IMG/VR virus record: IMGVR_UViG_3300027759_006101
Span: 124,001-188,000 of that record
Direction: 5' to 3' (one strand)
Length of the DNA stretch: 64,000 nt
The position numbers were made by a program, and so were the translations under genes. Below are positions 30,198 through 58,435 of this stretch, piece by piece. The notes beneath the pieces are model-generated. The model saw only the letters and a program-made list of their open reading frames with translations, was not told where the DNA came from and did no database searches. How positions within the stretch are numbered: the first letter of the stretch is position 1; the number at the start of each line of letters is the position of its first letter.

Positions 30198-30342
30198 TCT
30201 GTACACAGCCCTTGACATTTGTCAAGGGCTTTATTATTTATTTTTTTATGCAAAGTGTTTATAGGAATGGTAAATACCATTCCTGAAAAAATTTGTCAAA
30301 TAAATTTTTTTACTTGACAAGATATTGGATATGTGGTAAGAC

Positions 30343-30537
30343 CTACATCTCCATTGCTTTTGCTTTTGCTCTTTCTTTGGCAGTTTGTGATTCTGCAAGT
30401 ATACGGTCTGCTTCAGCAAGGGTAAACTGATTCTTGACGCTGTTTTTAAGCATCCTATGCAGAATCTCCACATATGCTTTCTGCATTCCAACTTCCATGG
30501 CGAGTTCTGTGATGTGTTTCATTTCGTTCATGTACAT
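30343..30537 (-). CDS. hypothetical cassette protein
   Basis: Own minus-strand promoter. Confidence 0.6.
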   Translation of the reverse strand: MYMNEMKHITELAMEVGMQKAYVEILHRMLKNSVKNQFTLAEADRILAESQTAKERAKAKAMEM

Positions 30538-30637
30538 AATATATCACTTTGTATATATTATTGCAAGGCTTATTTAGTTAATAGATCATACATAAATAAG
30601 TATTGCAAAAGTGCATATTGTGCTGTAATATATAGAC

Positions 30638-30832
30638 ATGAACAAAGATACAAAAGTAGAACTAGAGTTTTCCACCAATCGTTTCTGGGAACTCTCCATG
30701 TCCGACCTTGGTTATACCGAAGGTATGACAGAAGAAGAATTCAATGCAAAGATTGCAGACTTCATCAACTCTGACGACTTTGAAACCAGGTACATACCTG
30801 AAACCAATGAACTGAAAGTCTACGCAGAGTAG
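30638..30832 (+). CDS. small acidic cassette protein
   Basis: Leaderless promoter, family A terminator. Confidence 0.7.
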   Translation: MNKDTKVELEFSTNRFWELSMSDLGYTEGMTEEEFNAKIADFINSDDFETRYIPETNELKVYAE

Positions 30833-31043
30833 ACTTATCATATCTCTTGACGAAAGTCAAGAGATATTTATTTAATTTATTTTTTGTTGTTTATCTTTAG
30901 GCACGGTAAATACCGTGCCTATAAAATTTTGTCAAATTTATTTTTACTACCACAGTCCAGACCCGTTGTCAAGAAAATAATTGTTTTTAGTTAATAACTA
31001 AATAAGTATTGCAATGTGATATAACTTGCTGTAATATATAGAC

Positions 31044-31511: not shown

Positions 31512-31664
31512 CCACTACCATATCCCTTGGCAAATGTCAAGGGATATTTATTTAAATATTTTTTTTGCAATCTATCTTAAGGTACGGTATTTACCGTACC
31601 TGAAAAATCTTGTCAAATAAATTTATTTTCTTGCATAGTATATACAATATGATATACTAACCCT

Positions 31665-32333: not shown

Positions 32334-32467
32334 ATAAATCCCAAGAATTTTTCTTGGGATTTATCTTTAGGTCTGGTAGAGACCAGACCTTTAAAATATT
32401 GTCAAATTTATTTATTTTCTTGACAGGTATATACTTTATGATATACTGACTGAGTAAGGAAAAAGAT

Positions 32468-32758: not shown

Positions 32759-32909
32759 CTTCTACAACAAAGATAAATCTCAAGAAAAATTCTTGAGATT
32801 TATCTTTAGGTCTGGTATTTACCAGACCTTTATTTTTTTGTCAAATTTATTTATTTTCTTGACAGGTATATACAGTGTGATATACTATTCTTGTAAGGGA
32901 GTTAGACAG

Positions 32910-33131
32910 ATGACATATTCAGAATACATTGCGAAGTGTGAAGTCGCAAAGACAGCGTTTCAGTGCAATGTTACATCTTCACTTATAGTTGATAATGCAA
33001 CACCAGAAAAACGGTTGGAGTGGATTGCCGAAGACCTTGCAAAACTTAATGCAGAGTTGGAAGTGATTGGTAAGGCGTTTGATGAACAGGATGAGGTTGG
33101 TGACCCGTTTGTAGGCTTGGAGGCAAAGTAA
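32910..33131 (+). CDS. cassette protein A1
   Basis: GGGAG SD; paralog of 33533..33745 (WIAED/WIADD, GDPFV). Confidence 0.7.
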   Translation: MTYSEYIAKCEVAKTAFQCNVTSSLIVDNATPEKRLEWIAEDLAKLNAELEVIGKAFDEQDEVGDPFVGLEAK

Positions 33132-33391: not shown

Positions 33392-33532
33392 AAAGAAGAT
33401 AAATCCCAAGAAAAAATCTTGGGATTTATCTTTAGGTATGTGAATTACATACCTAAATTTTTTTGTCAAATATATTTATTTTCTTGACAGGTATATACAA
33501 TGTGATATACTATTCTTGTAAGGGAGTTAGAT

Positions 33533-34014: not shown

Positions 34015-34108
34015 TAAATAAATCCCAAGAAAAATTCTTGGGATTTATCTTTAGTTATGGTATAACCATAACTGAAAAAATTTGCAAGAAAAAAATCTTG
34101 CAATCTTT

Positions 34109-34327
34109 TCAGAAAGTTAATGGTCTTGTTTTAATAACCAATTCCATATCTTCAATATCACCTTGAGGAACGAATGTGCAAAAATTCTCAAAACACTCGC
34201 AATAAGGTGCCCAACCATTCCACCCTTTACATGATGGTTTACAATTGGTGCTTTCAAACTTATGCCATCTCTCTTCAGCCAGCAAAGCCGACCAAAGAGA
34301 GAGAGCCTTTTGCCTGTAATTGTTCAT
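34109..34327 (-). CDS. small Cys-containing protein
   Basis: Last gene of a 3-gene coupled operon. Confidence 0.6.
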   Translation of the reverse strand: MNNYRQKALSLWSALLAEERWHKFESTNCKPSCKGWNGWAPYCECFENFCTFVPQGDIEDMELVIKTRPLTF

Positions 34328-34563
34328 TTAAGTCTGTAACTCTTGTCTAGTCTTAATTCTATCACACCATTGTTGTCTTCGGTAGCACCACGGTAAACAT
34401 TATCGCCAACACGAACATAACAACGTACAAAGTTTCCAAATTGTTCCCAGAATAATGGTTTGCGCATCTTGCTGTATCGTTTACCATTATGAATTCCAAC
34501 GACTTGAATCTTGCTGTCAGTTACCCAACGTGTACCACCATTGTTCAAGTAATAATGCGCCAT
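34324..34563 (-). CDS. hypothetical protein
   Basis: Coupled ORF. Confidence 0.6.
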   Translation of the reverse strand: MAHYYLNNGGTRWVTDSKIQVVGIHNGKRYSKMRKPLFWEQFGNFVRCYVRVGDNVYRGATEDNNGVIELRLDKSYRLK

Positions 34564-34763
34564 TACTTATTAACTCCTCTTTGCGTGTAAAAGTTATTGC
34601 CATCGCACAGAATCCATTCTGTGCAGTACTTGGATGCATAGTACTCGCCCAAGTCGATTGGGTCACGTCCTGATGCAAGAAGGATTCCATTGTAGTGTGC
34701 AGTGTAGAGCATCTTTGGCACACGGCTCTTGAATTTTACGATTACCTTGTCTGTAGTGTTCAT
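34563..34763 (-). CDS. hypothetical protein
   Basis: Leaderless promoter upstream. Confidence 0.6.
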   Translation of the reverse strand: MNTTDKVIVKFKSRVPKMLYTAHYNGILLASGRDPIDLGEYYASKYCTEWILCDGNNFYTQRGVNK

Positions 34764-34871
34764 AGCAATAGTATATCATCTTGTGTATAGGATGCAAGAT
34801 ATATCTTTTAAAAATAGTTCTTGACACCCTATATAATAAGTGTTATACTTAAGCAGTAAGGAGTTAGAACA

Positions 34872-35075
34872 ATGGATTATATTGAAGCGGAGTTGGAAGC
34901 AAGAATTTTTCCTAGCGTTGATGTTGACCCAATGGATTATATGACGGATGAGGAACTGGATGAACAGTTCGACAATGAACCAGATTGTGATGACCAATGG
35001 GCTGATGCAAACGCTTTGGCATCAGCAGGCTGGGGAACTGATGAAGACTACGGTGGAGGCGATATCGAATGGTGA
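34872..35075 (+). CDS. very acidic small phage protein
   Basis: ALASAGWGTDEDYG; TTGACA promoter, AAGGAG SD. Confidence 0.75.
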   Translation: MDYIEAELEARIFPSVDVDPMDYMTDEELDEQFDNEPDCDDQWADANALASAGWGTDEDYGGGDIEW

Positions 35076-35219
35076 TATCATATCCCTTGACAAAAGTCAA
35101 GGGATATTTTTATTTAACAATATTCGTAAGGAATGGTATTTACCATTCCTATAAAAAAACCTCAAGAAAAATTCCTGAGGTTTTTTTTGGAAGTAATGCA
35201 AGCCCAAGTTTATTATACG

Positions 35220-35597
35220 TTAATAAACCCTTGATGTATGGCAAATTACAACATCACCAAACAAATGCACATTATCTCTCTTACAAAGTTTTTGGTAAAT
35301 TGCACTTGCTATCATGTTATAGTTACCAATCTCTACATCATCCTTGAACTTTGTTTTAAGCTGTCCTTCTTCATCACAAATGAAAATCACGGATTCATCA
35401 CCTGTGTATGCGATTTCAAAGTAATCGTAGTTAGCATCTGACTTGATTTTGTCAATATCAAAGTACTGGTTGCCATCTATAACTTTGTCAAATTCACGTT
35501 CCTTGATATCACCCTCTATAGAAATATAAAAGCCTCTGATGTTGTTGCGTACTTCTTCAAGAATACGCTCAATGTTTACCAATGCTACAATGTTCAT
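35220..35597 (-). CDS. DUF3846-like protein
   Basis: ICDEEGQLK..N.IAS..LFGDVVI. Confidence 0.6.
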   Translation of the reverse strand: MNIVALVNIERILEEVRNNIRGFYISIEGDIKEREFDKVIDGNQYFDIDKIKSDANYDYFEIAYTGDESVIFICDEEGQLKTKFKDDVEIGNYNMIASAIYQKLCKRDNVHLFGDVVICHTSRVY

Positions 35598-35743
35598 AAC
35601 TAACTCCTTACACTATGATTATATCAGGCTGTATATATTGTGCAATATATTTTAAATATTTGACAAAATTTTATAGGTACGGTATTTACCGTACCTTAAG
35701 ATAGTTCACAATAAAAAAATTCCCCATTTCTGGGGAACTTTTT

Positions 35744-36088
35744 TTACTTTGCGTAGTCAGTGCTTTGTCTGGTAGTGCTTCGGAACATTTCAGCTACTTT
35801 GAACGCTTCAGACAAGTATGCATGAATTGCACTAGTCAAAGCCAAAGATGATATGTTATTATCAGTGAGGGTTTTGATTGGCATAGAATATTTCAATTCT
35901 GTGTCATCATTGAGAAAATGGTATACATCTGCTTCTATAGCATCCATTGTTGGACTTATGACTATATCAATAACACCATTGCCATGTGCTACACTTAAGA
36001 CTATGTCTTTTTGACCAAATTCTATCGCTTGCTTTACAAACTCTTCGGTAGTGTCAACGCTCTTAAAACCGTTCTTAGAGAACAACAT
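35744..36088 (-). CDS. hypothetical protein
   Basis: Likely start MLFSK. Confidence 0.55.
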   Translation of the reverse strand: MLFSKNGFKSVDTTEEFVKQAIEFGQKDIVLSVAHGNGVIDIVISPTMDAIEADVYHFLNDDTELKYSMPIKTLTDNNISSLALTSAIHAYLSEAFKVAEMFRSTTRQSTDYAK

Positions 36089-36410
36089 ATTTGTATTGCT
36101 TCTTTCCTTGTAACTCTCTTGATGATTGTACCATAACCATCCACATAGTAGACAACAAACTAACTGTAGCAAGACCTGCTACAAACATCATTGTGGTGTC
36201 AATGTTGCCACCCAAGATGTATTCAATAATCATAGAAAATGGCGTGAGCAACAAAACGCTACACGTCATAACTGTTATACACTCAAGCAATGTATATAGT
36301 GCTTTAGGCATATGCTTTGTAATCTGCCAAAAAGCAACAATGCCACCAGTGTAAAGAAAAACCTGTATTGTTCTATTAATAATCTCTTCTGTCATCCTGC
36401 TACCTCCCAA
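36075..36410 (-). CDS. three-TM membrane protein
   Basis: Hydrophobic segments. Confidence 0.6.
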   Translation of the reverse strand: MGGSRMTEEIINRTIQVFLYTGGIVAFWQITKHMPKALYTLLECITVMTCSVLLLTPFSMIIEYILGGNIDTTMMFVAGLATVSLLSTMWMVMVQSSRELQGKKQYKYVVL

Positions 36411-36613
36411 TCTTCTGCCAATACATCTTCAGTCTTTAAAGTATAACAAGCCCAAAAACTCATTTCTTCACCAGTAGACCAAACACATTTAAATTTAAGT
36501 TCTGATTCTTCTAGTTTTACCAAGATAACATTAGTAGAATTAGGATTCCACTTTTTGCTTCTTGTGATAGTCTTACCATCACGGAGCATTGGCAATACCT
36601 GTTCAAGTTTCAT
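36392..36613 (-). CDS. DUF2829/Tad2-like protein
   Basis: LEQVLPMLRDGKTITRSKKW...EDVLAEDWEV. Confidence 0.65.
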   Translation of the reverse strand: MKLEQVLPMLRDGKTITRSKKWNPNSTNVILVKLEESELKFKCVWSTGEEMSFWACYTLKTEDVLAEDWEVAG

Positions 36614-36682
36614 AGAGTAAGTATATCATCTATCATATACTTGTCAATAAGAATTTTTGCCCCATTTTTACTGGGGCATTAT

Positions 36683-36964
36683 TCAAAAATTATTCTCTTG
36701 CTTAATAACTTCTAATTTATTTAATAATTCTTCAGGGTATTCTTCTAATATATCTGCTAACTTAACTAAATTAGATGCTGTAGGAATTCTCTTACCATTA
36801 AGCCAGTTACTTACTTGTGGCTGTTTGACTCCCATCATCTCTGCAATTTCTACCTGTGTAAATTTAGTCATTATAACACTTTTTTTCTTCAATGTGTCTT
36901 GAATAATATTTACCTCTTCATTGGTATAGTTGGTATAGTTGGTGTTAAAAAGAATTTTTTTCAT
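36683..36964 (-). CDS. XRE-family HTH regulator
   Basis: TQVEIAEMMGVKQPQVSNWLNGKRIP..NLVKLADIL. Confidence 0.88.
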   Translation of the reverse strand: MKKILFNTNYTNYTNEEVNIIQDTLKKKSVIMTKFTQVEIAEMMGVKQPQVSNWLNGKRIPTASNLVKLADILEEYPEELLNKLEVIKQENNF

Positions 36965-37117
36965 AGAGAAACCTTTCTGTTGTTGTTACATCCTGTAGTA
37001 TATCACATCGTACATATGATTAATTTTGAGTAAAAATTTTTTTTGATAAAATTTTGAAGTTATGGTAATACCATAACTAAAGATAAATCCCAAGATTTTT
37101 CTTGGGATTCTTTTAGT

Positions 37118-37450: not shown

Positions 37451-37802
37451 ATCAAACTCCTTACACCAATAGTATAACACAAATTATATAAGATGCAAAT
37501 TTAAAAAATATATTTGACAAAAATTTATAGGCACGGTAAATACCGTGCCTTAAGTAAAATGTCAAAAAAATAGGAGGCCTAAGCCTCCTTGTCTTCATCT
37601 TTGAACTTATCATCCAAACAACTCTGGCATCCAACCCACCATTTATCATTGTAGCTCCAGCACTTACCTTGACCTGGCTGAACCACTACTTTGCACCAAC
37701 AGCACTTCTTAGCATACAAGTTCTTCATAACAACCTCCACAGTAAATATACCAGATTGTATATATAATGTCAAGAAAAATACCCCATCTCTGGGGTATTT
37801 AT

Positions 37803-38574: not shown

Positions 38575-38816
38575 TAGGTATAATTAAGTTAGAGTTTGGT
38601 ATGTTCAATCTTTATATAAGAGATGTTTGTGTAGTTTCAACAACTACTATGGCAGGCATCAAACACGCAATCAAAAAACACGGATTGCAAGGATATACAT
38701 ATGCAACAGGGTGAAAACCCTGTTTTTTTATTTGACAAATTTTTTAAGGTATGGCATTTACCATACCTTAAATTTTATGCAAGAAAAATCCCAAGAATTC
38801 TCTTGGGATTTATTAT

Positions 38817-39832: not shown

Positions 39833-40073
39833 AGGGATGGTAAGTACCATCCCTGAAAATAAATCCCAAGAAAATTCTTGGGATTTATTTATTTAAGAAT
39901 GTTTTTGTCTTACGTACTTTTCAATAGTACAAGCGATTGTAAAGAAGCCACAAGCCATAAAAGCAAAAGGCAAAATAAATAGAGTTAGCATTAGATATAT
40001 CCACTTCATTGTCGTTACCTAATTATACCATTATAATATAAATAATCAAGCCCCTTTTTACAGGGGCTTTGCT

Positions 40074-40328: not shown

Positions 40329-40451
40329 AGCAATATATTACCTCAGTTATAAAGACAATGCAAGAAAATAAATTTATTTGCGAAATAACTTTAGTTATGG
40401 TATTACCATAACTAGAATAAACCCTCAAGAAAATTCTTAGAGGATTTATTT

Positions 40452-41189: not shown

Positions 41190-41513
41190 CCTATATCATA
41201 TCCCTTGACGAAAGTCAAGGGATATATTTTTATTTGACAAATTTTTACAGGTGTGTGATTTACACACCTAAAGATAAATCCCAAGATTTTTCTTGGGATT
41301 TATTTTAAAACTCTTCTTGAACTTCTATACCATTATCATCACAATATTGGTATATTTCTTTCTTTCTTTTTTCATCTCTTCTCATTACGAGCTGATTTGC
41401 AGAGTCAAATAATAAGTAACTGTTTCTACTTTTGCGTACAAACCAGATGACAATAGGGTAATCATCTAATAACATAATCAAGCTTGGAGGGACATAGTCC
41501 CTCCATTCCTTTC

Positions 41514-41825: not shown

Positions 41826-41977
41826 ATCCTAACTCCTTACACGAATAGTATAACACATATTGTATAGATGTCAAGAAAATAAATATATTTGACAAGTTTT
41901 TTAAGGAATGGTATTTACCATTCCTTAAGTTTATTTTCAACAAAAAAAAGAGGGCTTTTTAGCCCTCTTTTGCACAA

Positions 41978-44094: not shown

Positions 44095-44251
44095 ATTATA
44101 TCTGTTATATGATGAAATTTCAAGAGAAAAAAATATTGCAAAGATTTTACAGGTATGGTGGTCACCATACCTTCGATAAAGTTGCAAAAATAATTTGACA
44201 GCTTGACTTGACAAAAAAAAAGCCCCCTCCCGAAGGAGGGGGCTTGGTGGT

Positions 44252-45676: not shown

Positions 45677-45948
45677 ACAACAGTTAAGGGCTTTTCCTTA
45701 CTGACAAAGATAGTATAAGGCATACTTTAAAAGTGTGCAATAGAAATCGGGAGATATGTAACAAAAAAAGTTACCTATTTTAGAGCTGAAAAAAATATTT
45801 TGACAAATTTATAAAGGTGTGGTCTTTACCACACCTTAAGATAATTGTTAAATAAAAAACAGGCAAGTGGAGGGGTCTTGCCTGTTTTTTATTGCCTTAT
45901 TTGACTAAGGTCTGATAATATTATACATAATATTCAACGCAGATGCAC

Positions 45949-46550: not shown

Positions 46551-47121
46551 ATCGCTCTCCTTATGTGTATATAATAACGCATATATTGGGAGTTGTCAAA
46601 TAAAAATATCCCTCTTACTGAAAAGAGGGATATTTGTTGGCCTGCTAGATTATTGACTTAAGGGCAATATACCTATCAACATCTGGATGGTAAAAACAGA
46701 AATTTTTCTTTTTTTACTCCGTGAGAACCAAACTAGTTTCTTATTACTAAAAATGTTAAGAGTAAACCTTTTTAATTAAGAATTGCAAAATCATAACCAT
46801 CAGACCACTTGACAAAATTCTTCTTAATGACTGGGTCTGTAATACTATCAATAATCTTATTGATATTGATTTCATTAGCTAAAAAAGCATTCTTACCAAT
46901 AGCATCCTTGACAGCCTGGTAAGACTTGTCATCAAACTTCTTACGGAAATTAGAGAGGTGAATTTTCTTCAATTCATTTACCTTGAAACTTTATTTTGCA
47001 TTTTCATGCATAAGTATTTTATGAAAAAATTTGACAATTGTCAATAGGCATTGTACTACAATGCCTTAAGTATTTTGTCAAGATTATTCTCCCCTCCACT
47101 TCTGGAGGGGAGATAGTCAGG

Positions 47122-47607: not shown

Positions 47608-47808
47608 TTGGCTTCTCTCAACTAAGAACTAACTATGTTGTTCTTACACCAGTAGTATAACCTAACTACTATATGTTGTCAACAAACTATGCTATATATT
47701 TTAGAATATATTTTTTATTTGCATAAAAATTTCAGGAATGGTAATTACCATTCCTAGAGCTTATTGACAAAAAATTTTAGGATACACTTCATTGTGTATC
47801 CTAATTGT

Positions 47809-48141: not shown

Positions 48142-48342
48142 TGTATGGCTTCCTTTCATTGATAGTATACTCGGATAATATATACATTGTCAACGTATTG
48201 GGAACACCAAAACAAATATTTTTAATAATAAAATCAGGCATTGTATACTCAATGCCTGAAAATAAAATGCAAATAAAAAATCCCTTCCAGAAAACACTAC
48301 TAAACTGGAAGGGATGAGACTCAATCTGTTTTATTATTTATC

Positions 48343-49135: not shown

Positions 49136-49140
49136 CAAAA

Positions 49141-49452: not shown

Positions 49453-49590
49453 AATATTACCCAAGATGTGAGAAGAATGTAACGGGCATACGAACCATGT
49501 TATTTCCACTCTTCTCACATTTTTCCAGAATCACCACATTCTGAGTTTGTTCTTGATGCTGTAATCACCTTGAACAAATATAGCATATCA

Positions 49591-49827: not shown

Positions 49828-49851
49828 GTGTACATTAAGAAAACACTATTG

Positions 49852-50448
49852 TCAAGGTTTATAATCTTTGGAGATTACTTTATTAAATTGCCTAGGGTCA
49901 TACCAATAGCATCCAACACAAGTGCCTGCATAATTAGACTCTCCAACAATCCATCCAAATGAATAACCAAGCCTTTTTGCATCGTATCTTTCATTTGTTT
50001 CCTCACACGTCTTACAATGAGTTCTCTTTGATAAATTTACGTTCCTCAATAATGGCTGAAAATCATCTTCATTTTGATTTTCTACGCTATTATAAGTATC
50101 AGAACTATATCGTCCGTCTTTATGGTCACACTCGATATTTTCTCCACCAACATCAACAACACGGCATCTTTGTTTTCTTATTGATTTGAAAATATCAGTT
50201 CGTATACGTTTTTCAATTGATGTTTCTCTATAACCATCAAGACGAATTCCTATAGTGCGATTTTTATCTTTTTCTCTATGAACAATGAAATCTTTTAATT
50301 GTCCATCAGAGCGGTTCCAATCTCCACCATTTTTAGTTTGGAATTCTACGCCGGGATATAAAGTTTCCAATTCACTATATAGCCAAAGACGAGTTTTACC
50401 ATCACTATCTGGTTGTGACGCTTGAAGAAACATTTGTACTTTTGTCAT
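49852..50448 (-). CDS. NlaIII/IceA1-like HNH restriction endonuclease
   Basis: FL...PD.DG.TR, NGG.W.R, IE.DHKDGR, DFQPL, KR..CK.C..T..R.DA and CVGCY.YDP match the IceA1/NlaIII pattern. Confidence 0.75.
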   Translation of the reverse strand: MTKVQMFLQASQPDSDGKTRLWLYSELETLYPGVEFQTKNGGDWNRSDGQLKDFIVHREKDKNRTIGIRLDGYRETSIEKRIRTDIFKSIRKQRCRVVDVGGENIECDHKDGRYSSDTYNSVENQNEDDFQPLLRNVNLSKRTHCKTCEETNERYDAKRLGYSFGWIVGESNYAGTCVGCYWYDPRQFNKVISKDYKP

Positions 50449-51139
50449 TTAATTTAGCGATTCTCTCTGTTGCTTTTGTGTAATAAGTTTCATCCAATTC
50501 ACAACCCATAAAGTTTCGTCCAGTGTTATAGCAAGCCACTGCACAAGAAGCAGAGCCAGCAAAACAATCCAAAACAGTATCGCCTTCATTGGAGTGTTTG
50601 GTAATTAAAGCTTGCAGTAAATTGAGAGGCTTTTGAGTAGGATGGAAACGGTCTCTCTCATGACAGATTGCAAACTCATAAATTCCCTTATCATATTGAG
50701 AATGAAATGTTGGTTTACTTCCTTTGATAGCAGTAAGGGCTATCTCTCTTGAATTGGTGAGATAATTAATCTTCGAATTGATAGGAACAGGATTTGTCTT
50801 TACCCATTCAATAAACCGGAGTTGCTTAAACTTGGCACTCTCAATCCAATTCTTAAGAGTCTCGATTTTCCACAAGTCATAGAAACAAATTAATGTTCCA
50901 CCTGGCTTGAGGATACGATAAGATTCTTCCATAACCTTATCAAGAACAAAGATTTCATTATCCCACTCTCCAAATTCATAGGACATCTTAAATCTTTCAA
51001 CACCCTTCTCTCCACAACTCTCGAATCCTGTTGCTCGTGAAATTGTATATGGTGGGTCAATCAAAACAAGATTTACTGATTTATCTGCAACACGAGGCAA
51101 AAAATCAAGACAAGATTCATTATTTAAAACGATAGACAT
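50405..51139 (-). CDS. N4/N6 DNA methyltransferase (beta class), likely cognate of the adjacent nuclease
   Basis: IDPPY, HPTQKP, VLDCFAGSAS; overlaps the nuclease start. Confidence 0.9.
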   Translation of the reverse strand: MSIVLNNESCLDFLPRVADKSVNLVLIDPPYTISRATGFESCGEKGVERFKMSYEFGEWDNEIFVLDKVMEESYRILKPGGTLICFYDLWKIETLKNWIESAKFKQLRFIEWVKTNPVPINSKINYLTNSREIALTAIKGSKPTFHSQYDKGIYEFAICHERDRFHPTQKPLNLLQALITKHSNEGDTVLDCFAGSASCAVACYNTGRNFMGCELDETYYTKATERIAKLNDKSTNVSSSVTTR

Positions 51140-51319
51140 TTGGCTTCCTCTTATTCATAATACGATATATCTTTAGGGTATGCAAGTTTAAAAAATTATT
51201 TGATCAATATTTTTAGGAATGGTATTTACCATTCCTTAAGAATAATTGCAAAAAAATCCCTCTTCCTATGAGCGAAGAAGAGGGATAGAACACAGAATTA
51301 TGAGCGGATTCTGTGTACT

Positions 51320-51814
51320 CTATTCTATCACAAGAAATTCAGTTGACAAGTCTTCTTTTTGGACAGGCTTTTCAGTGACAAAATAACTTTCTCGATTTAC
51401 CCAATGGCATCCAGAGATTACAACAAAGCAATCATCAGAATCAACCATTGTCCAAATGTTTTCTGGATTCTGCTTCTTTACAAATTCCCATTGGTCATCT
51501 TCAGAGTAATCGAAAGAACATCCCTCGAAACTAGTTTCCTCGAATTGATTCTTTAATGGTTTGTATTTCTCAACCCATTCATCATAGGTAAATACTCTCC
51601 TAAGAGAAAGAATATTCATCTCTGTCACTTCACAAATACCAACCTCATAATTGCCAATAAATGAATTAATATATTCTTCAGCAATCAATTTATCTTCGGT
51701 ATTGGTTGTTTGGATATACCCTTGCTTTTCAACATTTATAATTGGCTTACCGGGATATTTCCAACTAAACTTAACATTGACTTCGTAGGTTGGGGTAATA
51801 ATAGTGTTTTCCAT
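51320..51814 (-). CDS. phage protein (MENT start)
   Basis: IWTMVD...SG.HWVNR.YFVTEKP is typical of phage hypotheticals. Confidence 0.7.
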   Translation of the reverse strand: MENTIITPTYEVNVKFSWKYPGKPIINVEKQGYIQTTNTEDKLIAEEYINSFIGNYEVGICEVTEMNILSLRRVFTYDEWVEKYKPLKNQFEETSFEGCSFDYSEDDQWEFVKKQNPENIWTMVDSDDCFVVISGCHWVNRESYFVTEKPVQKEDLSTEFLVIE

Positions 51815-51914
51815 ACCTGTATTATATCATATGTTGTATGTACTGCAATAGGAAATCCCCTTCTTGTCGGAGAAGGGGATTGGTTTCACTTGTGGAGATA
51901 AGACAAGTGAAAAG

Positions 51915-51986
51915 TGGCTCCAGCAGAAGTCGAATCTGCACTCAAAATCTTAAAAGGATTCTGCTTTACCGTTAAGCTATGGAACC
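51915..51986 (-). tRNA. tRNA-Lys(TTT)
   Basis: GGTTCCA/TGGAGCC, GAATC-CTTTTAA-GATTT, GCAGATTCGACTTCTGC. Confidence 0.85.
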
Positions 51987-52116
51987 AAACTAAAAGAAAG
52001 AGGTTATGTGTTGCCTGTGATGGAGACTAGTTATCCAGAGCACAATTCCCACTTCACATTAAAAATTTCTTTCACGACAAGACTCAGATTACTCTTTTGT
52101 CTAACCTCTCTCAAAA

Positions 52117-52197
52117 TCCTCCAGACGAGATTCGAACTCGTAAGGCTTGCGCCAACGGATTTTAAGTCCGTCGTGTATACCGTTCCACCACCGGAGG
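52117..52197 (-). tRNA. tRNA-Leu(TAA)
   Basis: CCTCCGG/CTGGAGG, ACGGA-CTTAAAA-TCCGT, variable arm GGCGCAAGCC, GAGTTCGAATCTC. Confidence 0.9.
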
Positions 52198-52317
52198 ATA
52201 CGCTAATATTATACCATTAGGGTTAGCCGATTCAAGAACTATCTATACATTTATTTTTCTTTGACAAAAAAATAAAGGGATGGTATTCACCATCCCTTTT
52301 AAAATATACTAAATATT

Positions 52318-53067: not shown

Positions 53068-53229
53068 AAGTTTTTCCTCTATATGGATTTTCTTTTTTCT
53101 CTACCTCTAATCCTGTTTAAAAATATTTCTGATAAGTTTTTTTAGGAATGGTAAAGACCATTCCTCCAATAAAATGACAAAAAAATATCCCCCAAATTTC
53201 TTCGGGGGATTTTCTTGACAAAACCGAAA

Positions 53230-54375
53230 CTATGGGTTCAGTTCGTTGTAGATGCGCTTGACATCATCTTGGGTAGTATGATGAAGGAGTGTCTCAAAGG
53301 CAATCCGGGTCTGGTCATCATAGAAATCAAACTCACGTCTGATTGACATAGCCAAAGCCGGACGACGAGATGAGAACAGATGACCAACCAATTGGATAAG
53401 ATTGACCGTTTGCTTCGTCCAATCTACACTCTGAATCTTGTTGTCAAGAGGAAGAGTCAATTGGATTTCAGTCTTAGATTCCTCATCCTCATTCTCACAG
53501 TCGCAACAGTTTCCGCACTGTTCACACTCACAACACCAAGAATTGTATTCTGAATCGCAACCAGAGCAGAGGTCTTCTTCATCATCATCGTTCCAGATAT
53601 CAACATCATCATCTTGGTCAGTCTGGAAGCGTGAAGCATACAATGGGTCAGTGAGGTCGATTTCATACTCCCCAACTACCTTATACTTACAGGTGCGGAG
53701 TTTCTGGAATTCACAGTCGGTTGGAATGGATACAACGTCAGATGGATTGATTTCCACCAACATAATGTGACCATACCCACCTGAAAATTGCTTTGCATAT
53801 TCAATGGTTCCAGCGTGAAAGCCATATGAACATCCAATATTCTTATCATCGTCCACCTTGTTGCGTGGCATCTCAAGAACTGCATCTACAGTGTTGAGGA
53901 ACTTGCCAGAGTGCTTGTCGGTGTAATCTTCACGGACTGCTTTGTAAGCACAGAAATTGCCATTATCTGTGATAGGCAATGCACGATGCTCAAGGAAGGT
54001 GTACAATTCATCGACTGCACGTTTTGATGGATTGAGGTTTAACTTCAAGATAAACTTGAAGAGGTGTACACAATCCAACCCTGCCTCAAGGAACGAAAGC
54101 ACACGGGTTGCAAGAGTGGAGTGAACTGGCTCATCAAAGACGTAGAGGTTGCCATCCTTAACTTCAATGCCCTCATACTTGGCATAGAGGCTCTTAAGGC
54201 GCAATTCTGGATTGACAAAAGAGATGAATGCATCCCAGTCATTTACCTTATATGCTTCTAAAGCATTCGTGAACAATTTGTTTCCTGCGTTGATTGAATG
54301 GGACTTGCCATCCAATACTACAGTAATGAAACCTGATTGAGGGTCAGGATTTACAATACGGGCTGTAACGGTCAT
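53230..54375 (-). CDS. rIIB: rIIB-like protein
   Basis: ELY.FL...LPIT.NG.F.AYKAV..DY.D.HSG, MPR.KVDDD..CS.GFH, V.I.P.DVVSIP.D..K.R.C.Y.VV; downstream of rIIA. Confidence 0.85.
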   Translation of the reverse strand: MTVTARIVNPDPQSGFITVVLDGKSHSINAGNKLFTNALEAYKVNDWDAFISFVNPELRLKSLYAKYEGIEVKDGNLYVFDEPVHSTLATRVLSFLEAGLDCVHLFKFILKLNLNPSKRAVDELYTFLEHRALPITDNGNFCAYKAVREDYTDKHSGKFLNTVDAVLEMPRNKVDDDKNIGCSYGFHAGTIEYAKQFSGGYGHIMLVEINPSDVVSIPTDCEFQKLRTCKYKVVGEYEIDLTDPLYASRFQTDQDDDVDIWNDDDEEDLCSGCDSEYNSWCCECEQCGNCCDCENEDEESKTEIQLTLPLDNKIQSVDWTKQTVNLIQLVGHLFSSRRPALAMSIRREFDFYDDQTRIAFETLLHHTTQDDVKRIYNELNP

Positions 54376-54599
54376 AGTGTTTCTTTTTACCTTTATAACT
54401 GGAACGATATACCAGTTTACCATATCTACAATCATCTGCAAGCCAAACTCGAAAAATAAATAGTGCAAGCTCGAAAAAAATATTTTCTTGCATATATTTT
54501 TTAGGGATGGTAATTACCATCCCTTCGAAATTCTATCAAAAAAAAAGGAGGCTCGAAAGCCTCCTTTTCCTATTGGACTATTTGTTTTGAGGAAACCTA

Positions 54600-56708
54600 T
54601 TAGTCCAATAAGCCCTCACTTTTCAGATAATCTTGCGACTTAAGGTACTCATTGACAATATACCAGTACTTTTCGGTCGGAGATTCACTATAATGTGATG
54701 ATTTTTGTGAATATCCGAACAAATTACGCAAAATTGGGTATTTAATTAGGGTTTTATCTACTAATTCTATGCATTCATTGTAAATGTCAAGATACAAACC
54801 ATAACCTTGCTTCTTAAGGAATGAAACTCTTTCACCTTGGTTTGAAATGGACAAACCAGAACTGTAATACTCTGATATGATTTCCTTTAGACGGGTTAAG
54901 TCTCTGTCAGTGTCTACCATATTTTTTCTGAAGGCATATTGCCATTCATCAGACACATCAAGCGATATCAGATACTGATTGAATTTCATAATTTCTTCAT
55001 CGGTTTGATTGTAAAGCGACTGCTGGATGTAATCAGTTATCTCAATCCATCCAGAACCCAATTTTTCAATGTCGCAATACTTGACACCGTAAATGTTGTC
55101 ACATCTGATTCCTAATGTATGAGCATTGGACAGCAATTCTTTGAATGCTTCCATTGTCTTAATATTTGTACCATTAGGGTGTTTGGCTACAGGGAGGAAT
55201 CGCTTAATCTCAACATAGATTCCTTCGGATTGTTGGAGAGAAAGCGTGGTCGATTTCCAAGTGTTTCGCAAGGTGCTTTGATGGGGACAATAACTGTAGA
55301 CTTCGCTTGTGGCAAACGACCCAGCAGATTTGCCTGTGACCTTGCTGTATTGCAATGTTGATACATCGACAAAATTTGCACCCTGCCATTCTGGGTGGTT
55401 AACAATTGAATCGCAATCAGCCTTTGACGCAAAACGCAAAAGGAATCCCGACAACTTTGAATAACCAGAATTCATAATTCTCTGGCGAATCGAATTTTGA
55501 GGGACATTGCCATAGTAGGCAAATAAGGTTTGTCCCTCTACTATGTTCAGAGATGATGAATTTTTGAATGACGAACGTGCATCATTTCGGATTTCTTCTA
55601 TCTCCTTAATGGCAGGGTAATCTTTCCTGTAAAGAAGCATATTGGAATTTGTTCTATATGCTTTGCCACCATAGATTGAAATGAGATTAAAAACATCTCT
55701 TATCTGATTAGTGTTTTCAAATTCAAGAGCAAATTGATAGAAACTCTTGCATTCAGATAGTCTCTCATCAATTTGACCCTTGACTGTGGAATGAATTCCT
55801 TTCAGTGCCTCAAAGATATATTGTTTGGTCTTTGTATTCATTTCCAAAGATTCACGGGAGGCAGATGGAACAACACTACCTATCGGGGCATAGAGCTTAA
55901 CCTTTAGATTGCGGAAGCACTCTACAGTCTTGAATTCATCACTCGTCAAACCCAAATCATCAATGTGAAATGGATAGTTAACATTCCCCATTCTGACACA
56001 AGACTTTTGATTGAATCCCCAAGTGTGAATAGCATAGTCTTCAGTACTGACAACGAAAGATTTTTCGACCTGACGTTGCAACAAATTTACAACCCGGTCA
56101 TCATTCTTAACTATTGGCTGTGGGTTGAATTCTGCAAGGAACGAACCTGCTACCTCACGGAATTGGGACAGGTCGATTGTCTTAACAACGATATCAATTG
56201 CCAATCCAGTTTCAGATGTTGCTTCCTCAGATATCTTGGAAATCTTACCGATGTTGGTTTCATCAATATATGCGAGGTAAACTGACTTTACACCATTGTG
56301 ATATGACGTGATGGTGAAATCGTTTACATAACAGAATGCAGACTTGCTACCAAGACCCAACATTCCAACCTGCTCATTTGTTCCACGTTTGGTTGATTCG
56401 CCATACGAAACAAAGATATTGTAAACTTCAGACTCTGACAGACCCTTGCCAAAATCACGGATAGTCAAAGAATTCTTGAATGCTGTTGGGAATGATACCT
56501 CAATCGGTCGGCTTGGAATACCTGCATCAATGTGTGCGTCAAATGCATTTGTGCAGTATTCACGAATGATGGCAAGAGGCTTGTTGCTATACAACTGGTT
56601 GCGGAGAATGCCAAAGATATGACCAATGTTAGACTGCTTGACAGTAAAGAATGCTTCGGACTGGATGCCAGATGACTGGACTTGAATTGTCGATTCAGCG
56701 ATTTTCAT
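54600..56708 (-). CDS. rIIA: rIIA-like protein (N-terminal GHKL domain)
   Basis: LYSN..A.IREY.TNA.DAH, IRDFGKGLS, STKR..N..VG.LGLGSKSAF, PSASRESL. Confidence 0.88.
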   Translation of the reverse strand: MKIAESTIQVQSSGIQSEAFFTVKQSNIGHIFGILRNQLYSNKPLAIIREYCTNAFDAHIDAGIPSRPIEVSFPTAFKNSLTIRDFGKGLSESEVYNIFVSYGESTKRGTNEQVGMLGLGSKSAFCYVNDFTITSYHNGVKSVYLAYIDETNIGKISKISEEATSETGLAIDIVVKTIDLSQFREVAGSFLAEFNPQPIVKNDDRVVNLLQRQVEKSFVVSTEDYAIHTWGFNQKSCVRMGNVNYPFHIDDLGLTSDEFKTVECFRNLKVKLYAPIGSVVPSASRESLEMNTKTKQYIFEALKGIHSTVKGQIDERLSECKSFYQFALEFENTNQIRDVFNLISIYGGKAYRTNSNMLLYRKDYPAIKEIEEIRNDARSSFKNSSSLNIVEGQTLFAYYGNVPQNSIRQRIMNSGYSKLSGFLLRFASKADCDSIVNHPEWQGANFVDVSTLQYSKVTGKSAGSFATSEVYSYCPHQSTLRNTWKSTTLSLQQSEGIYVEIKRFLPVAKHPNGTNIKTMEAFKELLSNAHTLGIRCDNIYGVKYCDIEKLGSGWIEITDYIQQSLYNQTDEEIMKFNQYLISLDVSDEWQYAFRKNMVDTDRDLTRLKEIISEYYSSGLSISNQGERVSFLKKQGYGLYLDIYNECIELVDKTLIKYPILRNLFGYSQKSSHYSESPTEKYWYIVNEYLKSQDYLKSEGLLD

Positions 56709-56921
56709 AATAGGTTTCCTCACTAGAATATTACCATCTGTGTATATGGTGTGCAAGTACTATATTTGAAATAAAAAAAATTGACAAATTTTTTTAGGTC
56801 TGGTGTCTACCAGACCTGTCATAGAATGTCAAATTATTTTTTTAGCTGCATTTAAGCACAAATAAGGACGCTATAAGAGCATTTAGTGCAATTATAACGT
56901 CCTTATTGGAAGATTTGTGGG

Positions 56922-58238
56922 CTAAACGCCCACAAACTGGTATTGTCGTGAGACCTTTTCTTCCATTTGGTTTGCTCTAGCGTCAATTAGACCCCATCGC
57001 TTGGAAATCTCTTCCAATGAAGAATCAATGGATGGTGCAAGTATCTTGCTTGCTAAGGTTTCCATCTCTTCACGGGTTGCCCCGGTGTAATCTTGGGCAG
57101 AGCGGGTCAAGCCATTGATGATACCAAAGGCAGACTTTTCGTGAACATCGCCGTGGCGTTCGTGCAAGGAATCCAAGTAGCCCTTGTGCCAGAGTTTACC
57201 CTGTTCGATGGTCATCTTTTCATCCCTAGCCAACTGAGCAATTACAGCAACAGGGTTCTTAACCTTGACTTGCTTTGCATATCCTAACAAGGTCAACATA
57301 TCATTGCCTTGTGTCAATGCAACCTTGATTGCTTGGGTAACTTGCAATTGAAGGTCTCCAAGGTCAATCTTACCCATATGGCGTTGGTTGACGTTGATTT
57401 CTGAATTCATACGTCCCCATATCATACCATTGAGGCAGATTGCTCTAAACAGGAAAGGCGAAATCTTGAATGTTGAATTACGAATCTCACTGTTCTTGAA
57501 TGCAATGCCCACGCCATAGTCAGAGTCTGGTTCACTCTTCATATAGTCTGGCAAGAGGATGTTCCCATAGATATCATCACCATCATTGAAGAGGTGTGAA
57601 GCAAGAGCATCATTCAAAGATGGCAGAGCATTGGCTACCATTTCCATTGCTTCGTGATTGTCAATCACGCCGTATCGTTCTGATACAATAGCCCGGATAA
57701 CATCGTTACCATCATCATCGTGACGGATGCGGACATTAAAGGAACGCTTTTCCTTACCCTTGTTATTCCAGTCAGTTTCACGGCGGTCTAAGTCTGCATT
57801 GACAAACTTGACCAAGTCATCGTTGTATTCCCTTTCCTTGAGAAAGTTAACCATTGACGATGGAATGTCTGTGAACATACGTAAGGAATTGATACCTGAA
57901 TCGGTAAGAGGTGTACCGTCAATCAAGGTTTCAACATCCTTGAGGCGAATTTCTGATTCTGGCTTGATTACATCTACCTTGTTGGTCGATTGTGACTTAA
58001 TTGTTTCGATGAAATCGGCAAGCGGTGTACATTTAGCCTGCCATTGCTTGGCAACGTGGCGGTGTGATGCAGAGGACTGAAGCCCAATGGCATTCACCCA
58101 ATTACCACTAGCATCTTGCTTGGCTACAGCACCTTCACGGGGTTGAAGGGACTGGGCATTGGTGAAAACAGAGGTGTTTGGTGTGACCTTGACTGGTGCA
58201 TCGTCCAGTTCAAGGAACGATTTAGGTGTATTCGACAT
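56922..58238 (-). CDS. DUF932/DUF945-like protein
   Basis: IRAIVSERY..IDN, NSE, FR.ICLNGMI, H.G, INGLT. Confidence 0.7.
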   Translation of the reverse strand: MSNTPKSFLELDDAPVKVTPNTSVFTNAQSLQPREGAVAKQDASGNWVNAIGLQSSASHRHVAKQWQAKCTPLADFIETIKSQSTNKVDVIKPESEIRLKDVETLIDGTPLTDSGINSLRMFTDIPSSMVNFLKEREYNDDLVKFVNADLDRRETDWNNKGKEKRSFNVRIRHDDDGNDVIRAIVSERYGVIDNHEAMEMVANALPSLNDALASHLFNDGDDIYGNILLPDYMKSEPDSDYGVGIAFKNSEIRNSTFKISPFLFRAICLNGMIWGRMNSEINVNQRHMGKIDLGDLQLQVTQAIKVALTQGNDMLTLLGYAKQVKVKNPVAVIAQLARDEKMTIEQGKLWHKGYLDSLHERHGDVHEKSAFGIINGLTRSAQDYTGATREEMETLASKILAPSIDSSLEEISKRWGLIDARANQMEEKVSRQYQFVGV

Positions 58239-58435
58239 AACGGGTTGGCTTCCTTATCAAACAATGTGATACTGAATATTACCATCTGTGTATACTAGTT
58301 GCCACAAGTATTTTAAATATATTTTTGAATGCCAGGACTATCACAAAAGCTTGTTTTTGTCAAGAAAATAAAAAACTTGACAACTTTCTTAAGCCGGGGA
58401 AATCCCCGGCTTAAGAAAGTTCTTATATTTTAAAT

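What the first reader, a model, noticed from the sequence alone, without database searches (positions are those of the whole stretch)
30248..58420. Array of structure-conserved symmetric elements separating gene cassettes (candidate new system)
Seen: at least 27 elements, about one per kb, and none noticed in the first 30 kb. The form is TTGACA-N9-AGG-nnn-GGT-loop-ACC-n'n'n'-CCT-N9-TGTCAA. Complete examples are 37514-37565, 47031-47081 and 56781-56832. The nnn varies (AAT, CAC, TAC, TCT, TAT, GAT, TGT, CAT) and the partner arm always covaries. Even consensus positions change in compensated pairs (AGTTATGGT/ACCATAACT; AGGGATGAT/ATCATCCCT). The 9-bp spacers are A/T-rich, nearly fixed in length and mostly not complementary. 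Selection therefore appears to act on pairing and geometry rather than on a simple operator sequence. Known: integron attC sites are structure-defined hairpins with outer and inner boxes that bound gene cassettes, and T4-type phages have promoter/stem-loop (PeSL) cassettes that shuffle early genes. This motif is not attC (no GTTRRRY/RYYYAAC). Inference: hairpin or cruciform sites for cassette excision, inversion or acquisition in the early region, or signals for DNA entry. The cognate enzyme is not in the window.
Basis: partly seen in the sequence, partly recalled or inferred. Interest (0 to 1): 0.93.

Follow-up and report, generated by a model that had tools for sequence, protein, structure and literature searches.

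The report
Phage gene-cassette linkers with DNA palindrome
An uncultured 358-kb freshwater phage separates its small early-type genes with 27 copies of a terminator–palindrome–promoter linker; related phages have reshuffled the genes at these linkers, much like the known PeSL cassettes of T4-type phages, but the added perfectly paired DNA palindrome is unexplained.

Summary
There are 27 hairpin cores of the form AGGnnnGGT-loop-ACCnnnCCT between 30263 and 56817, and none elsewhere in the window. The strict hairpin-plus-box pattern occurs nowhere else in the 358-kb source contig. More than 140 related loci give 379 unique box-anchored copies.

The element is oriented with the genes. It reads: intrinsic terminator, TTTG-N12-palindrome-N8-TTGTCAAAT, AT-rich tract, strong sigma70-type promoter (TTGACA-N16-TGnTATAMT), Shine-Dalgarno (SD) sequence, ATG.

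Pairing covaries strictly as Watson-Crick pairs. There are no G·U intermediates, and loops flip to their reverse complement between orthologous copies. This points to a DNA-level palindrome in a mostly untranscribed spacer, not an RNA hairpin.

Relatives show massive cassette shuffling, inversion and loss or gain of whole linkers. Breakpoints are scattered over about 150 bp of the linker, and the hairpin travels with either neighbour about equally. This fits homologous or short-homology exchange, as in T4-type PeSLs. It does not fit attC-like site-specific recombination.

Verdict: a new variant of PeSL-type regulatory linkers. The function of the palindrome is unresolved; my best guess is a protein-bound boundary site.

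The parts
30263..30284 (+). E1 palindrome core AGGAATGGT-aaat-ACCATTCCT; TTGTCAAAT box at 30293
30899..30920 (+). E2 core (nnn CAC); box at 30929
31580..31601 (+). E3 core (TAC); box at 31610
32369..32390 (+). E4 core (TCT); box at 32399; promoter -35 at 32420
32808..32829 (+). E5 core (TCT), taken as the model linker
32775..32807 (+). E5 linker: intrinsic terminator of the upstream gene (aaatctcaag-loop-cttgagattt plus T-rich tail)
   Evidence: read from sequence
32838..32846 (+). E5 linker: TTGTCAAAT box, 8 nt after the palindrome
32859..32886 (+). E5 linker: sigma70-type promoter TTGACA-N16-TGaTATACT; SD aagggag and ATG at 32910 follow
33434..33454 (+). E6 core (3-nt loop, G.T at the closing pair)
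34053..34073 (+). E7 core AGTTATGGT-ata-ACCATAACT, at the point where + and - strand gene blocks converge
35129..35150 (-). E8 core (AAT); no promoter found downstream
35675..35696 (-). E9 core (TAC); box at 35659-35667
37058..37078 (-). E10 core AGTTATGGT; upstream of the XRE-type helix-turn-helix (HTH) gene 36686-36964
37529..37550 (-).
38747..38768 (-). E12 core (TAT, one U.G-type closing pair in the gene direction)
39833..39854 (-). E13 core (GAT)
40393..40413 (-). E14 core AGTTATGGT, just after the candidate ncRNA cassette
41249..41269 (-). E15 core (TGT); appears to face a + strand ORF (40824-41189) with a terminator-like hairpin on the far side
41904..41925 (-). E16 core (AAT); its whole 151-nt linker is absent in relatives L144 and L049
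42403..42424 (-). E17 core AGGGATGAT/ATCATCCCT; the upstream ORF appears to end in the palindrome; no terminator seen
44151..44172 (-). E18 core (TAT)
45815..45836 (-). E19 core (TGT)
47046..47066 (-).
47734..47755 (-). E21 core (AAT)
48236..48257 (-). E22 degenerate core (8 bp)
51215..51236 (-). E23 core (AAT)
52276..52297 (-). E24 core (GAT); no upstream terminator seen
53144..53165 (-). E25 core (AAT), downstream of rIIB
54503..54524 (-). E26 core (GAT), between rIIA and rIIB
56796..56817 (-).
54603..56756 (-). rIIA homologue (context: a gene that is early in T4, inside the array)
   Evidence: phrog_612, E 3e-89
53233..54468 (-). rIIB homologue (context)

Best explanation
The elements are the central block (H) of composite intergenic linkers that turn each small gene, or gene pair, of a hyperplastic early-type region into its own transcription unit. 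In the gene direction a linker reads: rho-independent terminator (T); H, which is TTTGnnA-N9-AGGnnnGGT-(3-4 nt)-ACCnnnCCT-N8-TTGTCAAAT; a 12-nt AT-rich tract; a strong sigma70-type promoter with extended -10 (P); an SD sequence; and the start codon. They are the counterpart of the PeSL (promoter-early stem-loop) cassettes of T4-type phages. Because about 100-150 bp of near-identical linker recurs about once per kb, it serves as portable homology. Recombination or copy-choice between linkers, in direct or inverted orientation, deletes, inserts, swaps and inverts cassettes while leaving each gene with working signals. Shown here: the anatomy, the orientation, the strict DNA-type covariation, the loop flip-flop, the tie of H to terminator-promoter junctions, the shuffling, and the scattered breakpoints. 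Inferred: that the region is early and read by host RNA polymerase; that exchange is homology-driven; and the role of the palindrome itself. My best guess for the palindrome is a DNA-level site: a dyad bound by a dimeric protein and/or a transient hairpin. Such a site would mark or insulate the boundary between a terminator and the next promoter, for example as a roadblock or a global operator centred near -75 of the promoter. In this reading its arms are kept identical by intrastrand template switching.
For: The -35 hexamer starts 28-30 nt after the palindrome in 117 of 182 detected promoters. Terminator stems end in three position classes (-8/-7; -22 to -18; -34 to -28). H is tied to T-P junctions: of 100 strong promoters with a terminator within about 100 nt upstream, 91 have H; of 143 without a terminator, only 13 have H. 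Strong promoters without H exist in the window. Within the window, 23-24 of 27 H follow a terminator by my reading of the flanks. On covariation, 99.2% of cells are paired against 86.9% in shuffles, and 140 cells show double-sided changes against 25. There are no one-sided (G.U-type) changes in the three variable pairs. Covariation is limited to the 9 bp, plus a weak 10th pair. As an internal control, a real structured RNA in the same genomes shows many G.U intermediates. Loop flip-flop: 28 of 87 orthologous pairs with identical stems but different loops are exact reverse complements, against about 6% expected, and they cover 10 distinct loop pairs. Shuffling: among copy pairs that share a flank, 237 share both, 241 only the upstream flank and 280 only the downstream flank. 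Breakpoints fall at about -55, -38, -8, +22, +42, +54 and +100. A population variant shows an inversion-type junction between E7 and E10, and a junction between E1 and E16. A whole linker is absent between the same two genes in L144 and L049. Where synteny is kept, H is present in 90 of 92 junctions. Context: rIIA and rIIB lie inside the array, and a Tad2-like anti-defence domain and an XRE-type HTH protein are among the cassette ORFs. The PeSL definition and behaviour are taken from PMC2839356 and PMC4122927.
Against: Nothing here explains why a linker needs a separate, sequence-conserved perfect palindrome. Classical PeSLs have only the terminator stem-loop, and rare T-P linkers without H exist in these phages too (9 of 100). 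No binding protein is identified. No transcript ends could be mapped, because RNA coverage was thin and contig-based. The loci were fetched because they contain an element, so presence/absence counts are biased. Only 64 kb of the 358-kb genome, plus 10 kb beyond one end, was inspected for enzymes. Relationship to T4-type phages is not established: rIIA is only 24-28% identical to any cultured phage and the family is widespread.
Confidence: 0.68

Rival explanations
1. Site-specific cassette recombination sites, integron-attC-like or HUH/IS200-like: the folded palindrome plus the TTGTCAAAT box is cut and joined by a dedicated enzyme encoded elsewhere in the genome.
For: The architecture resembles attC: an outer box pair, an unpaired 9-nt spacer, an inner stem and a loop. 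GTCAAAT is one mismatch from the attC consensus GTTRRRY (read from the sequence; consensus from my own knowledge). The hairpin plus a box 8 nt to its 3' side matches the geometry of HUH-nuclease substrates (established knowledge, not tested). Upstream-shared homology most often ends just after the box, at +40 to +49. Cassettes are heavily shuffled.
Against: Breakpoints are scattered, not fixed. The hairpin type goes with the downstream gene about as often as with the upstream gene (0.40 against 0.44), whereas attC stays with its upstream ORF. The outer boxes do not covary. There are no extrahelical bases, since stems are 99% perfect. Every cassette has its own promoter. No integrase, recombinase or HUH domain was found in the ORFs scanned or in the 10 kb beyond one end of the window.
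Confidence: 0.08
2. RNA-level hairpins: a second terminator, a 3'-end stabiliser, an RNase III-type processing site or a pause hairpin acting on read-through transcripts.
For: They lie between genes and fold stably. T7-type early regions use inter-genic processing hairpins (established knowledge). In the larger, less stringent set, G.T-type pairs slightly outnumber A.C-type pairs in the gene direction (about 40 against at least 22, mostly at the loop-closing pair).
Against: H lies after the terminator's T-run and before the next promoter, so it is mostly untranscribed. On both strands it is preceded by T and followed by A, the reverse of a terminator. In the curated alignment there are no G.U intermediates in the three variable pairs among 144 copies, whereas the neighbouring ncRNA has many. 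Loops invert freely. The stem is too short for RNase III. No listed RNA contig crossed an element, although coverage was poor and most records were not shown.
Confidence: 0.07
3. Selfish REP/MITE-like palindromic repeats that spread by insertion next to terminators, with no function for the phage.
For: They are short extragenic palindromes with covarying stems placed after terminators and at convergent junctions, as for REP/BIME elements (established knowledge). Copy number is high, and loops flip.
Against: The strict hairpin-plus-box pattern is confined to one 27-kb region of a 358-kb genome. The element is in fixed register with the promoter. H alone was never seen to be gained or lost: 90 of 92 syntenic junctions keep it, and the two exceptions lack the whole linker. 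AGG/GGT is conserved across 379 copies in diverged phages. No RAYT (REP-associated tyrosine transposase) or transposase was found.
Confidence: 0.06
4. Promoter-type sites: either two face-to-face sigma70 sites (TTGnnA-N17-TGG-T+loop+A) or N4-like hairpin promoters for a phage RNA polymerase.
For: The spacing from TTG to TGG to the loop is exactly the -35 / extended -10 / -10 geometry on both strands, and the first loop base is A in 82% of copies.
Against: The hexamer always ends in A where sigma70 needs T at -7. Loop sequences vary and invert. A canonical strong promoter follows 45 nt downstream. Roughly half of the copies have no detected downstream promoter, and several window copies face a convergent gene or terminator with no gene to drive. 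rIIA/rIIB and the sigma70-type promoters suggest use of the host polymerase.
Confidence: 0.04

Closest known systems
PeSL (promoter-early stem-loop) regulatory cassettes of T4-type phages (Arbiol et al. 2010, PMC2839356; Comeau et al. 2014, PMC4122927)
   Same: Both are small composite intergenic units. Each has a stem-loop terminator, an AT-rich tract, a near-consensus sigma70 promoter, an SD sequence and a start codon. Both are repeated many times in a hyperplastic region of small ORFans. Indels, replacements and rearrangements between relatives map to the units, with crossover points that vary within them.
   Different: Here a separate, sequence-conserved block sits between the terminator and the promoter: a 9-10-bp perfect palindrome (AGGnnnGGT/ACCnnnCCT) plus a TTGTCAAAT box. 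The palindrome shows strict Watson-Crick covariation and loop flip-flop. The host phage is an uncultured 358-kb freshwater phage that is not shown to be T4-type. Mini-circles were not tested.
Integron attC sites
   Same: Both are structure-conserved sites at cassette boundaries, with an outer box pair, unpaired spacers and an inner stem. The box GTCAAAT is one mismatch from GTTRRRY.
   Different: There are no extrahelical bases and no covarying R box. Cassettes carry their own promoters and terminators. The hairpin is not tied to the upstream ORF, breakpoints are not fixed, and no integrase was seen.
REP/BIME extragenic palindromes of enterobacteria
   Same: Both are short extragenic palindromes with compensatory stem changes, placed after transcription units and at convergent junctions. 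Both have DNA-level roles proposed (gyrase and IHF binding).
   Different: REPs are transcribed, imperfect, dispersed genome-wide and linked to RAYT transposases. These elements are perfect, confined to one region and in fixed register with a promoter.
Hairpin promoters of phage N4 virion RNA polymerase
   Same: Both are short DNA hairpins in an AT-rich context in an early region, with DNA-level structure.
   Different: N4 has three such promoters, with specific loop and stem bases and a start site just downstream. Here the loops are free to vary and invert, and a sigma70 promoter drives the gene.

Membership tests
PeSL-type composite terminator/promoter cassette | sigma70-like -35/-10 promoter with an AT-rich upstream tract, followed by an SD sequence and a start codon | tested here: met
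   TTGACA-N16-TGnTATAMT, aaggag and ATG follow most window copies by my reading. A conservative detector finds a promoter in 182 of 374 copies of the family.
PeSL-type composite terminator/promoter cassette | stem-loop just upstream of the promoter that can act as terminator of the preceding gene | tested here: met
   A GC-rich hairpin plus T-run lies upstream in 23-24 of 27 window copies (my reading) and in 235 of 374 by a conservative detector. Terminator function was not assayed.
PeSL-type composite terminator/promoter cassette | many copies concentrated in a hyperplastic region of small, mostly unknown genes | tested here: met
   There are 27 copies in 27 kb and none in the other 37 kb. 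The 53 ORFs called in the array are mostly under 150 aa, and few match any family.
PeSL-type composite terminator/promoter cassette | indel, replacement and rearrangement breakpoints between related phages fall in the elements, at variable points | tested here: met
PeSL-type composite terminator/promoter cassette | circular excision products (mini-circles) in infected cells or virions | not testable with these tools
   This needs inverse PCR or raw junction reads. The contig-based read-laying run showed one 'goes back' joint only.
PeSL-type composite terminator/promoter cassette | carried by a T4-type myovirus | tested here: inconclusive
   rIIA and rIIB are present, but they are only 24-28% identical to any cultured phage and the family is widespread. 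There is no nucleotide match to 50,697 phage records.
Integron attC | R''/R' core sites RYYYAAC / GTTRRRY that pair and covary | tested here: not met
   The box is GTCAAAT (one mismatch). The left box is TTTGnnA, and pairing between the outer boxes is no better than chance.
Integron attC | extrahelical bases in the folded bottom strand | tested here: not met
   Stems are 99.2% perfectly paired, with no bulges.
Integron attC | site belongs to the 3' end of its cassette, with the crossover at one fixed position | tested here: not met
   The hairpin type is linked to the upstream neighbour at 0.44 and to the downstream neighbour at 0.40. Breakpoints range from -55 to +100.
Integron attC | adjacent integron integrase and attI | tested here: inconclusive
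   None was found in the window ORFs scanned or in the 10 kb beyond one end. The rest of the 358-kb genome was not inspected.
Intrinsic (rho-independent) terminator | GC-rich stem followed by a U-run on the transcribed strand | tested here: not met
   On both strands the palindrome is preceded by T-rich and followed by A-rich sequence. A separate canonical terminator lies upstream.
Structured RNA element | compensatory changes that include G.U intermediates, and strand-specific constraint | tested here: not met
   There are 0 one-sided changes in the three variable pairs among 144 copies. Loops flip to their reverse complement. The contrast is the ncRNA control.
sigma70 promoter formed by TTGnnA-N17-(T+loop+A) | -10 hexamer with A at -11 and T at -7 | tested here: not met
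   The last base of the hexamer is A in 97% of copies, and the loops are variable.
REP/RAYT or MITE | presence/absence of the repeat alone at orthologous sites; dispersed copies; an associated transposase | tested here: not met
   H is kept at 90 of 92 syntenic junctions, and the two exceptions lack the whole linker. The strict pattern is confined to one region of the source contig. No transposase domain was found.

The most novel reading that the evidence does not exclude
The perfect palindrome is a dedicated DNA hairpin or cruciform site for a phage-encoded, structure-specific protein that has not been seen: a nickase or recombinase, or a boundary factor. That protein would actively drive or police cassette exchange. 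The array would then be a phage-borne cassette platform that works like an integron but carries self-expressed cassettes. The loop flip-flop and inversion junctions would be footprints of its action.
Probability: 0.12. Interest if true: 0.85.

Novelty: new variant of a known kind. Interest (0 to 1): 0.5.

Why it matters
It extends PeSL-type modular shuffling from cultured T4-type phages to a widespread group of uncultured freshwater large phages, and it does so with unusually clear population-level evidence of swaps, inversions and linker loss. It also isolates a small, sharply defined DNA palindrome that termination and promotion cannot explain. The palindrome has strict Watson-Crick covariation and flip-flop loops, and it lies in fixed register with early-type promoters. 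That makes the old question of whether a specific protein helps cassette exchange, or insulates cassettes, directly testable with a 56-bp oligonucleotide. The cassettes carry anti-defence-type genes such as a Tad2-like domain, so the linkers are likely to be the means by which these phages trade counter-defence genes.

Tried and rejected
1. Reading TTGACA-N17-loop as a sigma70 promoter, in either direction. Rejected because -7 is always A and the loops vary and invert.
2. T4 middle (MotA box) or late (TATAAATA) promoter readings. Rejected from my own knowledge of the consensus: the spacing is wrong for MotA, and only about 19% of loops give TAAATA.
3. RNA hairpin. Rejected, see the rival explanations.
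4. An extended lower stem between the outer boxes, as in attC or RNase III sites. There is no covariation beyond the 9-10 bp.
5. An 'address code', meaning exchange only between copies with the same nnn. The two linkage values sum to 0.84, which is what crossovers outside the hairpin predict, not the roughly 1.44 expected under this idea.
6. MITE-type insertion. No H-only indels were found.
7. A fixed terminator-to-palindrome distance, as needed for a strict roadblock-assisted terminator. Terminator stems fall in three position classes, so only the TTTG block is fixed.
8. Nucleotide and protein searches against cultured phages. No nucleotide match, no match for the 898-aa protein, and only remote rIIA matches.
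9. Rfam. Only tRNAs were found.
10. Metatranscriptome contigs. They were too sparse to map ends.
11. Scan of bacterial genomes. Only two short, probably mis-binned contigs were found, so there is no host clue.
12. Literature search for the motif in jumbo phages. Nothing relevant was found.

Full report
**What is there.** The window is part of a 358,344-bp viral contig from a freshwater lake (IMGVR_UViG_3300027759_006101, also Ga0209191_1000001). The exact core AGGNNNGGTNNNNACCNNNCCT occurs 18 times, against 0 expected, and in all 18 the nnn triplets are complementary although the pattern does not ask for it. A relaxed scan finds 27 cores between 30263 and 56817 and none in the other 37 kb. The strict core-plus-box pattern occurs 10 times in the window, against 0 expected. 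In the complete scan of viral contigs, all its matches on the 358-kb source contig fall inside the window.

**Orientation and anatomy.** Genes run on the + strand from 30.4 to 34.0 kb and on the - strand from 34.1 kb to beyond 58 kb. Turned to the gene direction, all copies read the same way. The order is: stop codon of the upstream gene; a GC-rich hairpin with a T-run (an intrinsic terminator); TTTGnnA-N9-AGGnnnGGT-loop-ACCnnnCCT; an A-rich 8 nt; TTGTCAAAT; about 12 AT-rich nt; cTTGACA-N16-TGnTATAMT; aaggag; ATG.

The other outer box is only TTTGnnA. A position profile of 285 copies from many phages shows this. I call the conserved block H, the terminator T and the promoter P.

When a promoter is present, H is in fixed register with it: the -35 hexamer starts 28-30 nt after the palindrome in 117 of 182 detected promoters. 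That places the palindrome centre near -75 and the box near -51. Terminator stems end in three position classes.

H is tied to terminator-promoter junctions. Of 100 strong promoters preceded by a terminator, 91 have H. Of 143 strong promoters without a terminator, 13 have H. The window itself has consensus promoters without H, for example at 29963, 31916, 36647 and 48992. Some H copies sit at convergent junctions with no promoter, such as E7. The array includes rIIA (54603-56756) and rIIB (53233-54468), each preceded by a linker. The cassette ORFs are mostly small and unknown. They include a Tad2-like domain, an XRE-type HTH protein (36686-36964), a TPR protein and an IceA-type nuclease/methylase pair.

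**Is the pairing selected, and at what level?** Scans of viral and metagenome contigs gave more than 140 loci, almost all from fresh water. I anchored only on the box and the outer AGG/CCT, which gave 379 unique copies. The six inner pairs are about 94% Watson-Crick, and all four pair types occur at position 4.

On a 144-copy alignment, 99.2% of cells pair, against 86.9% in shuffles and 34-42% with slid partners. There are 140 double-sided changes against 25 expected. In the three variable pairs there is not one one-sided (G.U-type) change. Covariation stops at the 9-bp stem, apart from a weak tenth pair, and the outer boxes and spacers do not covary.

Orthologous copies, defined as having the same flanking genes and the same stem, often differ by an exact reverse-complement of the loop. 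Examples are AAAT/ATTT, AAAA/TTTT, AGAC/GTCT, CTAA/TTAG, ATTC/GAAT and ACTG/CAGT. This holds for 28 of 87 such pairs, against about 6% expected.

A structured RNA found by chance in the same genomes provides a control. Its helices show many G.U intermediates. In addition, H lies after the terminator's T-run and before the next promoter. Taken together, this argues for a DNA-level palindrome that at least transiently pairs within a strand, since template switching or arm-to-arm exchange would explain the flips. It argues against an RNA hairpin. On both strands H is preceded by T and followed by A, so it is not a terminator. As single-stranded DNA it folds at about -9 to -14 kcal/mol.

**Do cassettes move at the elements?** Yes. 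BLAST of related loci against the window shows the same genes in a different order and orientation. Among pairs of copies that share at least one flanking gene, 237 share both, 241 share only the upstream gene and 280 share only the downstream gene. For several window junctions no relative keeps both neighbours; E3, E7 and E14 are examples.

A DNA variant in another lake sample carries two informative junctions. One joins the E10 spacer to the reverse complement of the E7 flank, which is an inversion-type junction between two AGTTATGGT copies. The other joins E16 to the reverse complement of the E1 flank; both of these are AGGAATGGT copies.

In L144 and L049 the genes 41517-41825 and 41981-42394 abut with an overlapping TAATG, and the whole 151-nt linker is missing. 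Where both neighbours are kept, H is present in 90 of 92 junctions, so H alone is not seen to come and go.

**How do they move?** Homology shared on the upstream side ends mostly at +40 to +59, just after the box, but also at +70 to +110. Homology shared on the downstream side starts anywhere from -80 to +29. Individual recent cases break at about -55, -38, -8, +22, +42, +54 and +100.

The hairpin type is the same in 72% of fully syntenic pairs, 44% of upstream-only pairs, 40% of downstream-only pairs and 12% of random pairs. Linkage to either neighbour decays gradually across the linker. The two arms are never separated.

An attC-like mechanism predicts that the hairpin stays with the upstream ORF and that the crossover is fixed. 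A recombinase cutting at the dyad centre predicts mismatched arms. Neither is seen. The pattern is that of homologous or short-homology exchange, or copy-choice, anywhere within a repeated linker. This is what was described for PeSLs, where crossovers were mapped to varying points within the motif. No recombinase, integrase or HUH domain was found in the window ORFs scanned or in the 10 kb beyond one end. The rest of the genome was not inspected.

**What the palindrome does.** This is not shown here. I tested and rejected a sigma70 or N4-type promoter, a terminator, an RNA element and a MITE (see the rival explanations). What remains is a DNA site with dyad symmetry over about 54 bp (TTTG-N12-palindrome-N12-CAAA) whose loop orientation is irrelevant. 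It marks terminator-promoter and convergent boundaries and keeps a fixed phase with the promoter.

The reading I favour is a boundary or operator site for a dimeric protein. This could be a phage factor such as the XRE-type protein encoded in the array, or a host factor. Its arms would be homogenised by intrastrand template switching. I hold this at modest confidence. A type II topoisomerase site, or a recombination-initiating hairpin, are other DNA-level possibilities that I could not test.

**Comparison and novelty.** The linkers meet every PeSL feature that sequence can test: composite terminator and promoter, enrichment in a hyperplastic region, and variable-point exchange between relatives. 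Mini-circles and T4-type ancestry remain untested. What is new is the H block and the scale and clarity of the shuffling in an uncultured freshwater lineage. I rate it a new variant of a known kind, with moderate interest. There is a 0.12 chance that H is the site of a dedicated structure-specific enzyme, which would be much more interesting.

**Limits.** Loci were fetched by the element pattern, so there is ascertainment bias. Pair counts are not phylogenetically independent. RNA evidence is contig-based and sparse. The 'early' timing and use of host RNA polymerase are inferred from promoter form and from rIIA/rIIB.

Noticed in passing
window 40420-40725, minus strand: A candidate structured non-coding RNA forms its own cassette, with promoter TTGTGC-N17-TATTAT upstream and a terminator at 40423-40451. 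RNA depth is 140-200x at 40597-40686 in two independent metatranscriptome runs, against 2-5x in neighbouring genes. There is no Rfam match at E<=1. The region is 77-95% conserved in at least 15 relatives. RNAalifold on 13 homologues gives 74 pairs, 20 of them with compensatory double changes. The ORFs listed there (TTG/GTG starts) are probably spurious.
   Followed up: partly
window 49852-51139, minus strand: An IceA-family protein (by my recollection NlaIII-like, a CATG nuclease family) overlaps an N6/N4 DNA methylase gene. This looks like a restriction-modification pair carried as a phage cassette.
   Followed up: no
window 30-58 kb cassette ORFs (alignment A1): One ORF has a Thoeris anti-defence Tad2-like domain (E 4e-9), and one has TPR repeats. 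A second GHKL-ATPase protein (44255-45676) lies in the array besides rIIA. I did not determine which ORF carries the Tad2-like domain.
   Followed up: no
window 34074-37057, seen in DNA run X8: A population variant joins the E10 spacer (at 37048) to the reverse complement of 34084-34113. This amounts to an inversion of a 3-kb block between two inverted AGTTATGGT copies, and it moves the point where the two gene blocks converge. Further 'opposite strand' joints link 39858 to 40382 and 41229 to 41927, with short sides.
   Followed up: partly
L144:1533-1573 and L049:6078-6513, compared with window 41826-41976: The whole terminator-H-promoter linker is absent between two conserved genes, which then overlap by TAATG. 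This is a clean gain or loss of a complete regulatory linker.
   Followed up: yes
window 1-30 kb and 58-64 kb: The accessory genes outside the array include two more DNA or FkbM-type methyltransferases, a Fic/DOC protein, an RNase T-type exonuclease, an ART-PolyVal ADP-ribosyltransferase domain, a HAD 'Swiss Army Knife' RNA-repair domain, a nucleotide-sugar epimerase and an Ogg-like glycosylase. There are nine tRNA genes in two clusters (9255-13251 on the + strand; 48658-52198 on the - strand).
   Followed up: no
L143 (Crocinitomicaceae MAG) and L144 (Nomurabacteria MAG): The only genome-collection matches are short contigs (4.3 and 2.5 kb) inside MAGs. They are most likely phage DNA binned by mistake and are not reliable host evidence. 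The SD sequences and TTGACA/TATAAT promoters argue against a Bacteroidota host.
   Followed up: no
window 32793-33131, 35747-36172, 41981-42394 and others: Several mechanically listed ORFs with TTG or GTG starts run through the linkers. The real starts are the ATG after the SD sequence, for example 32910 for the gene after E5.
   Followed up: partly
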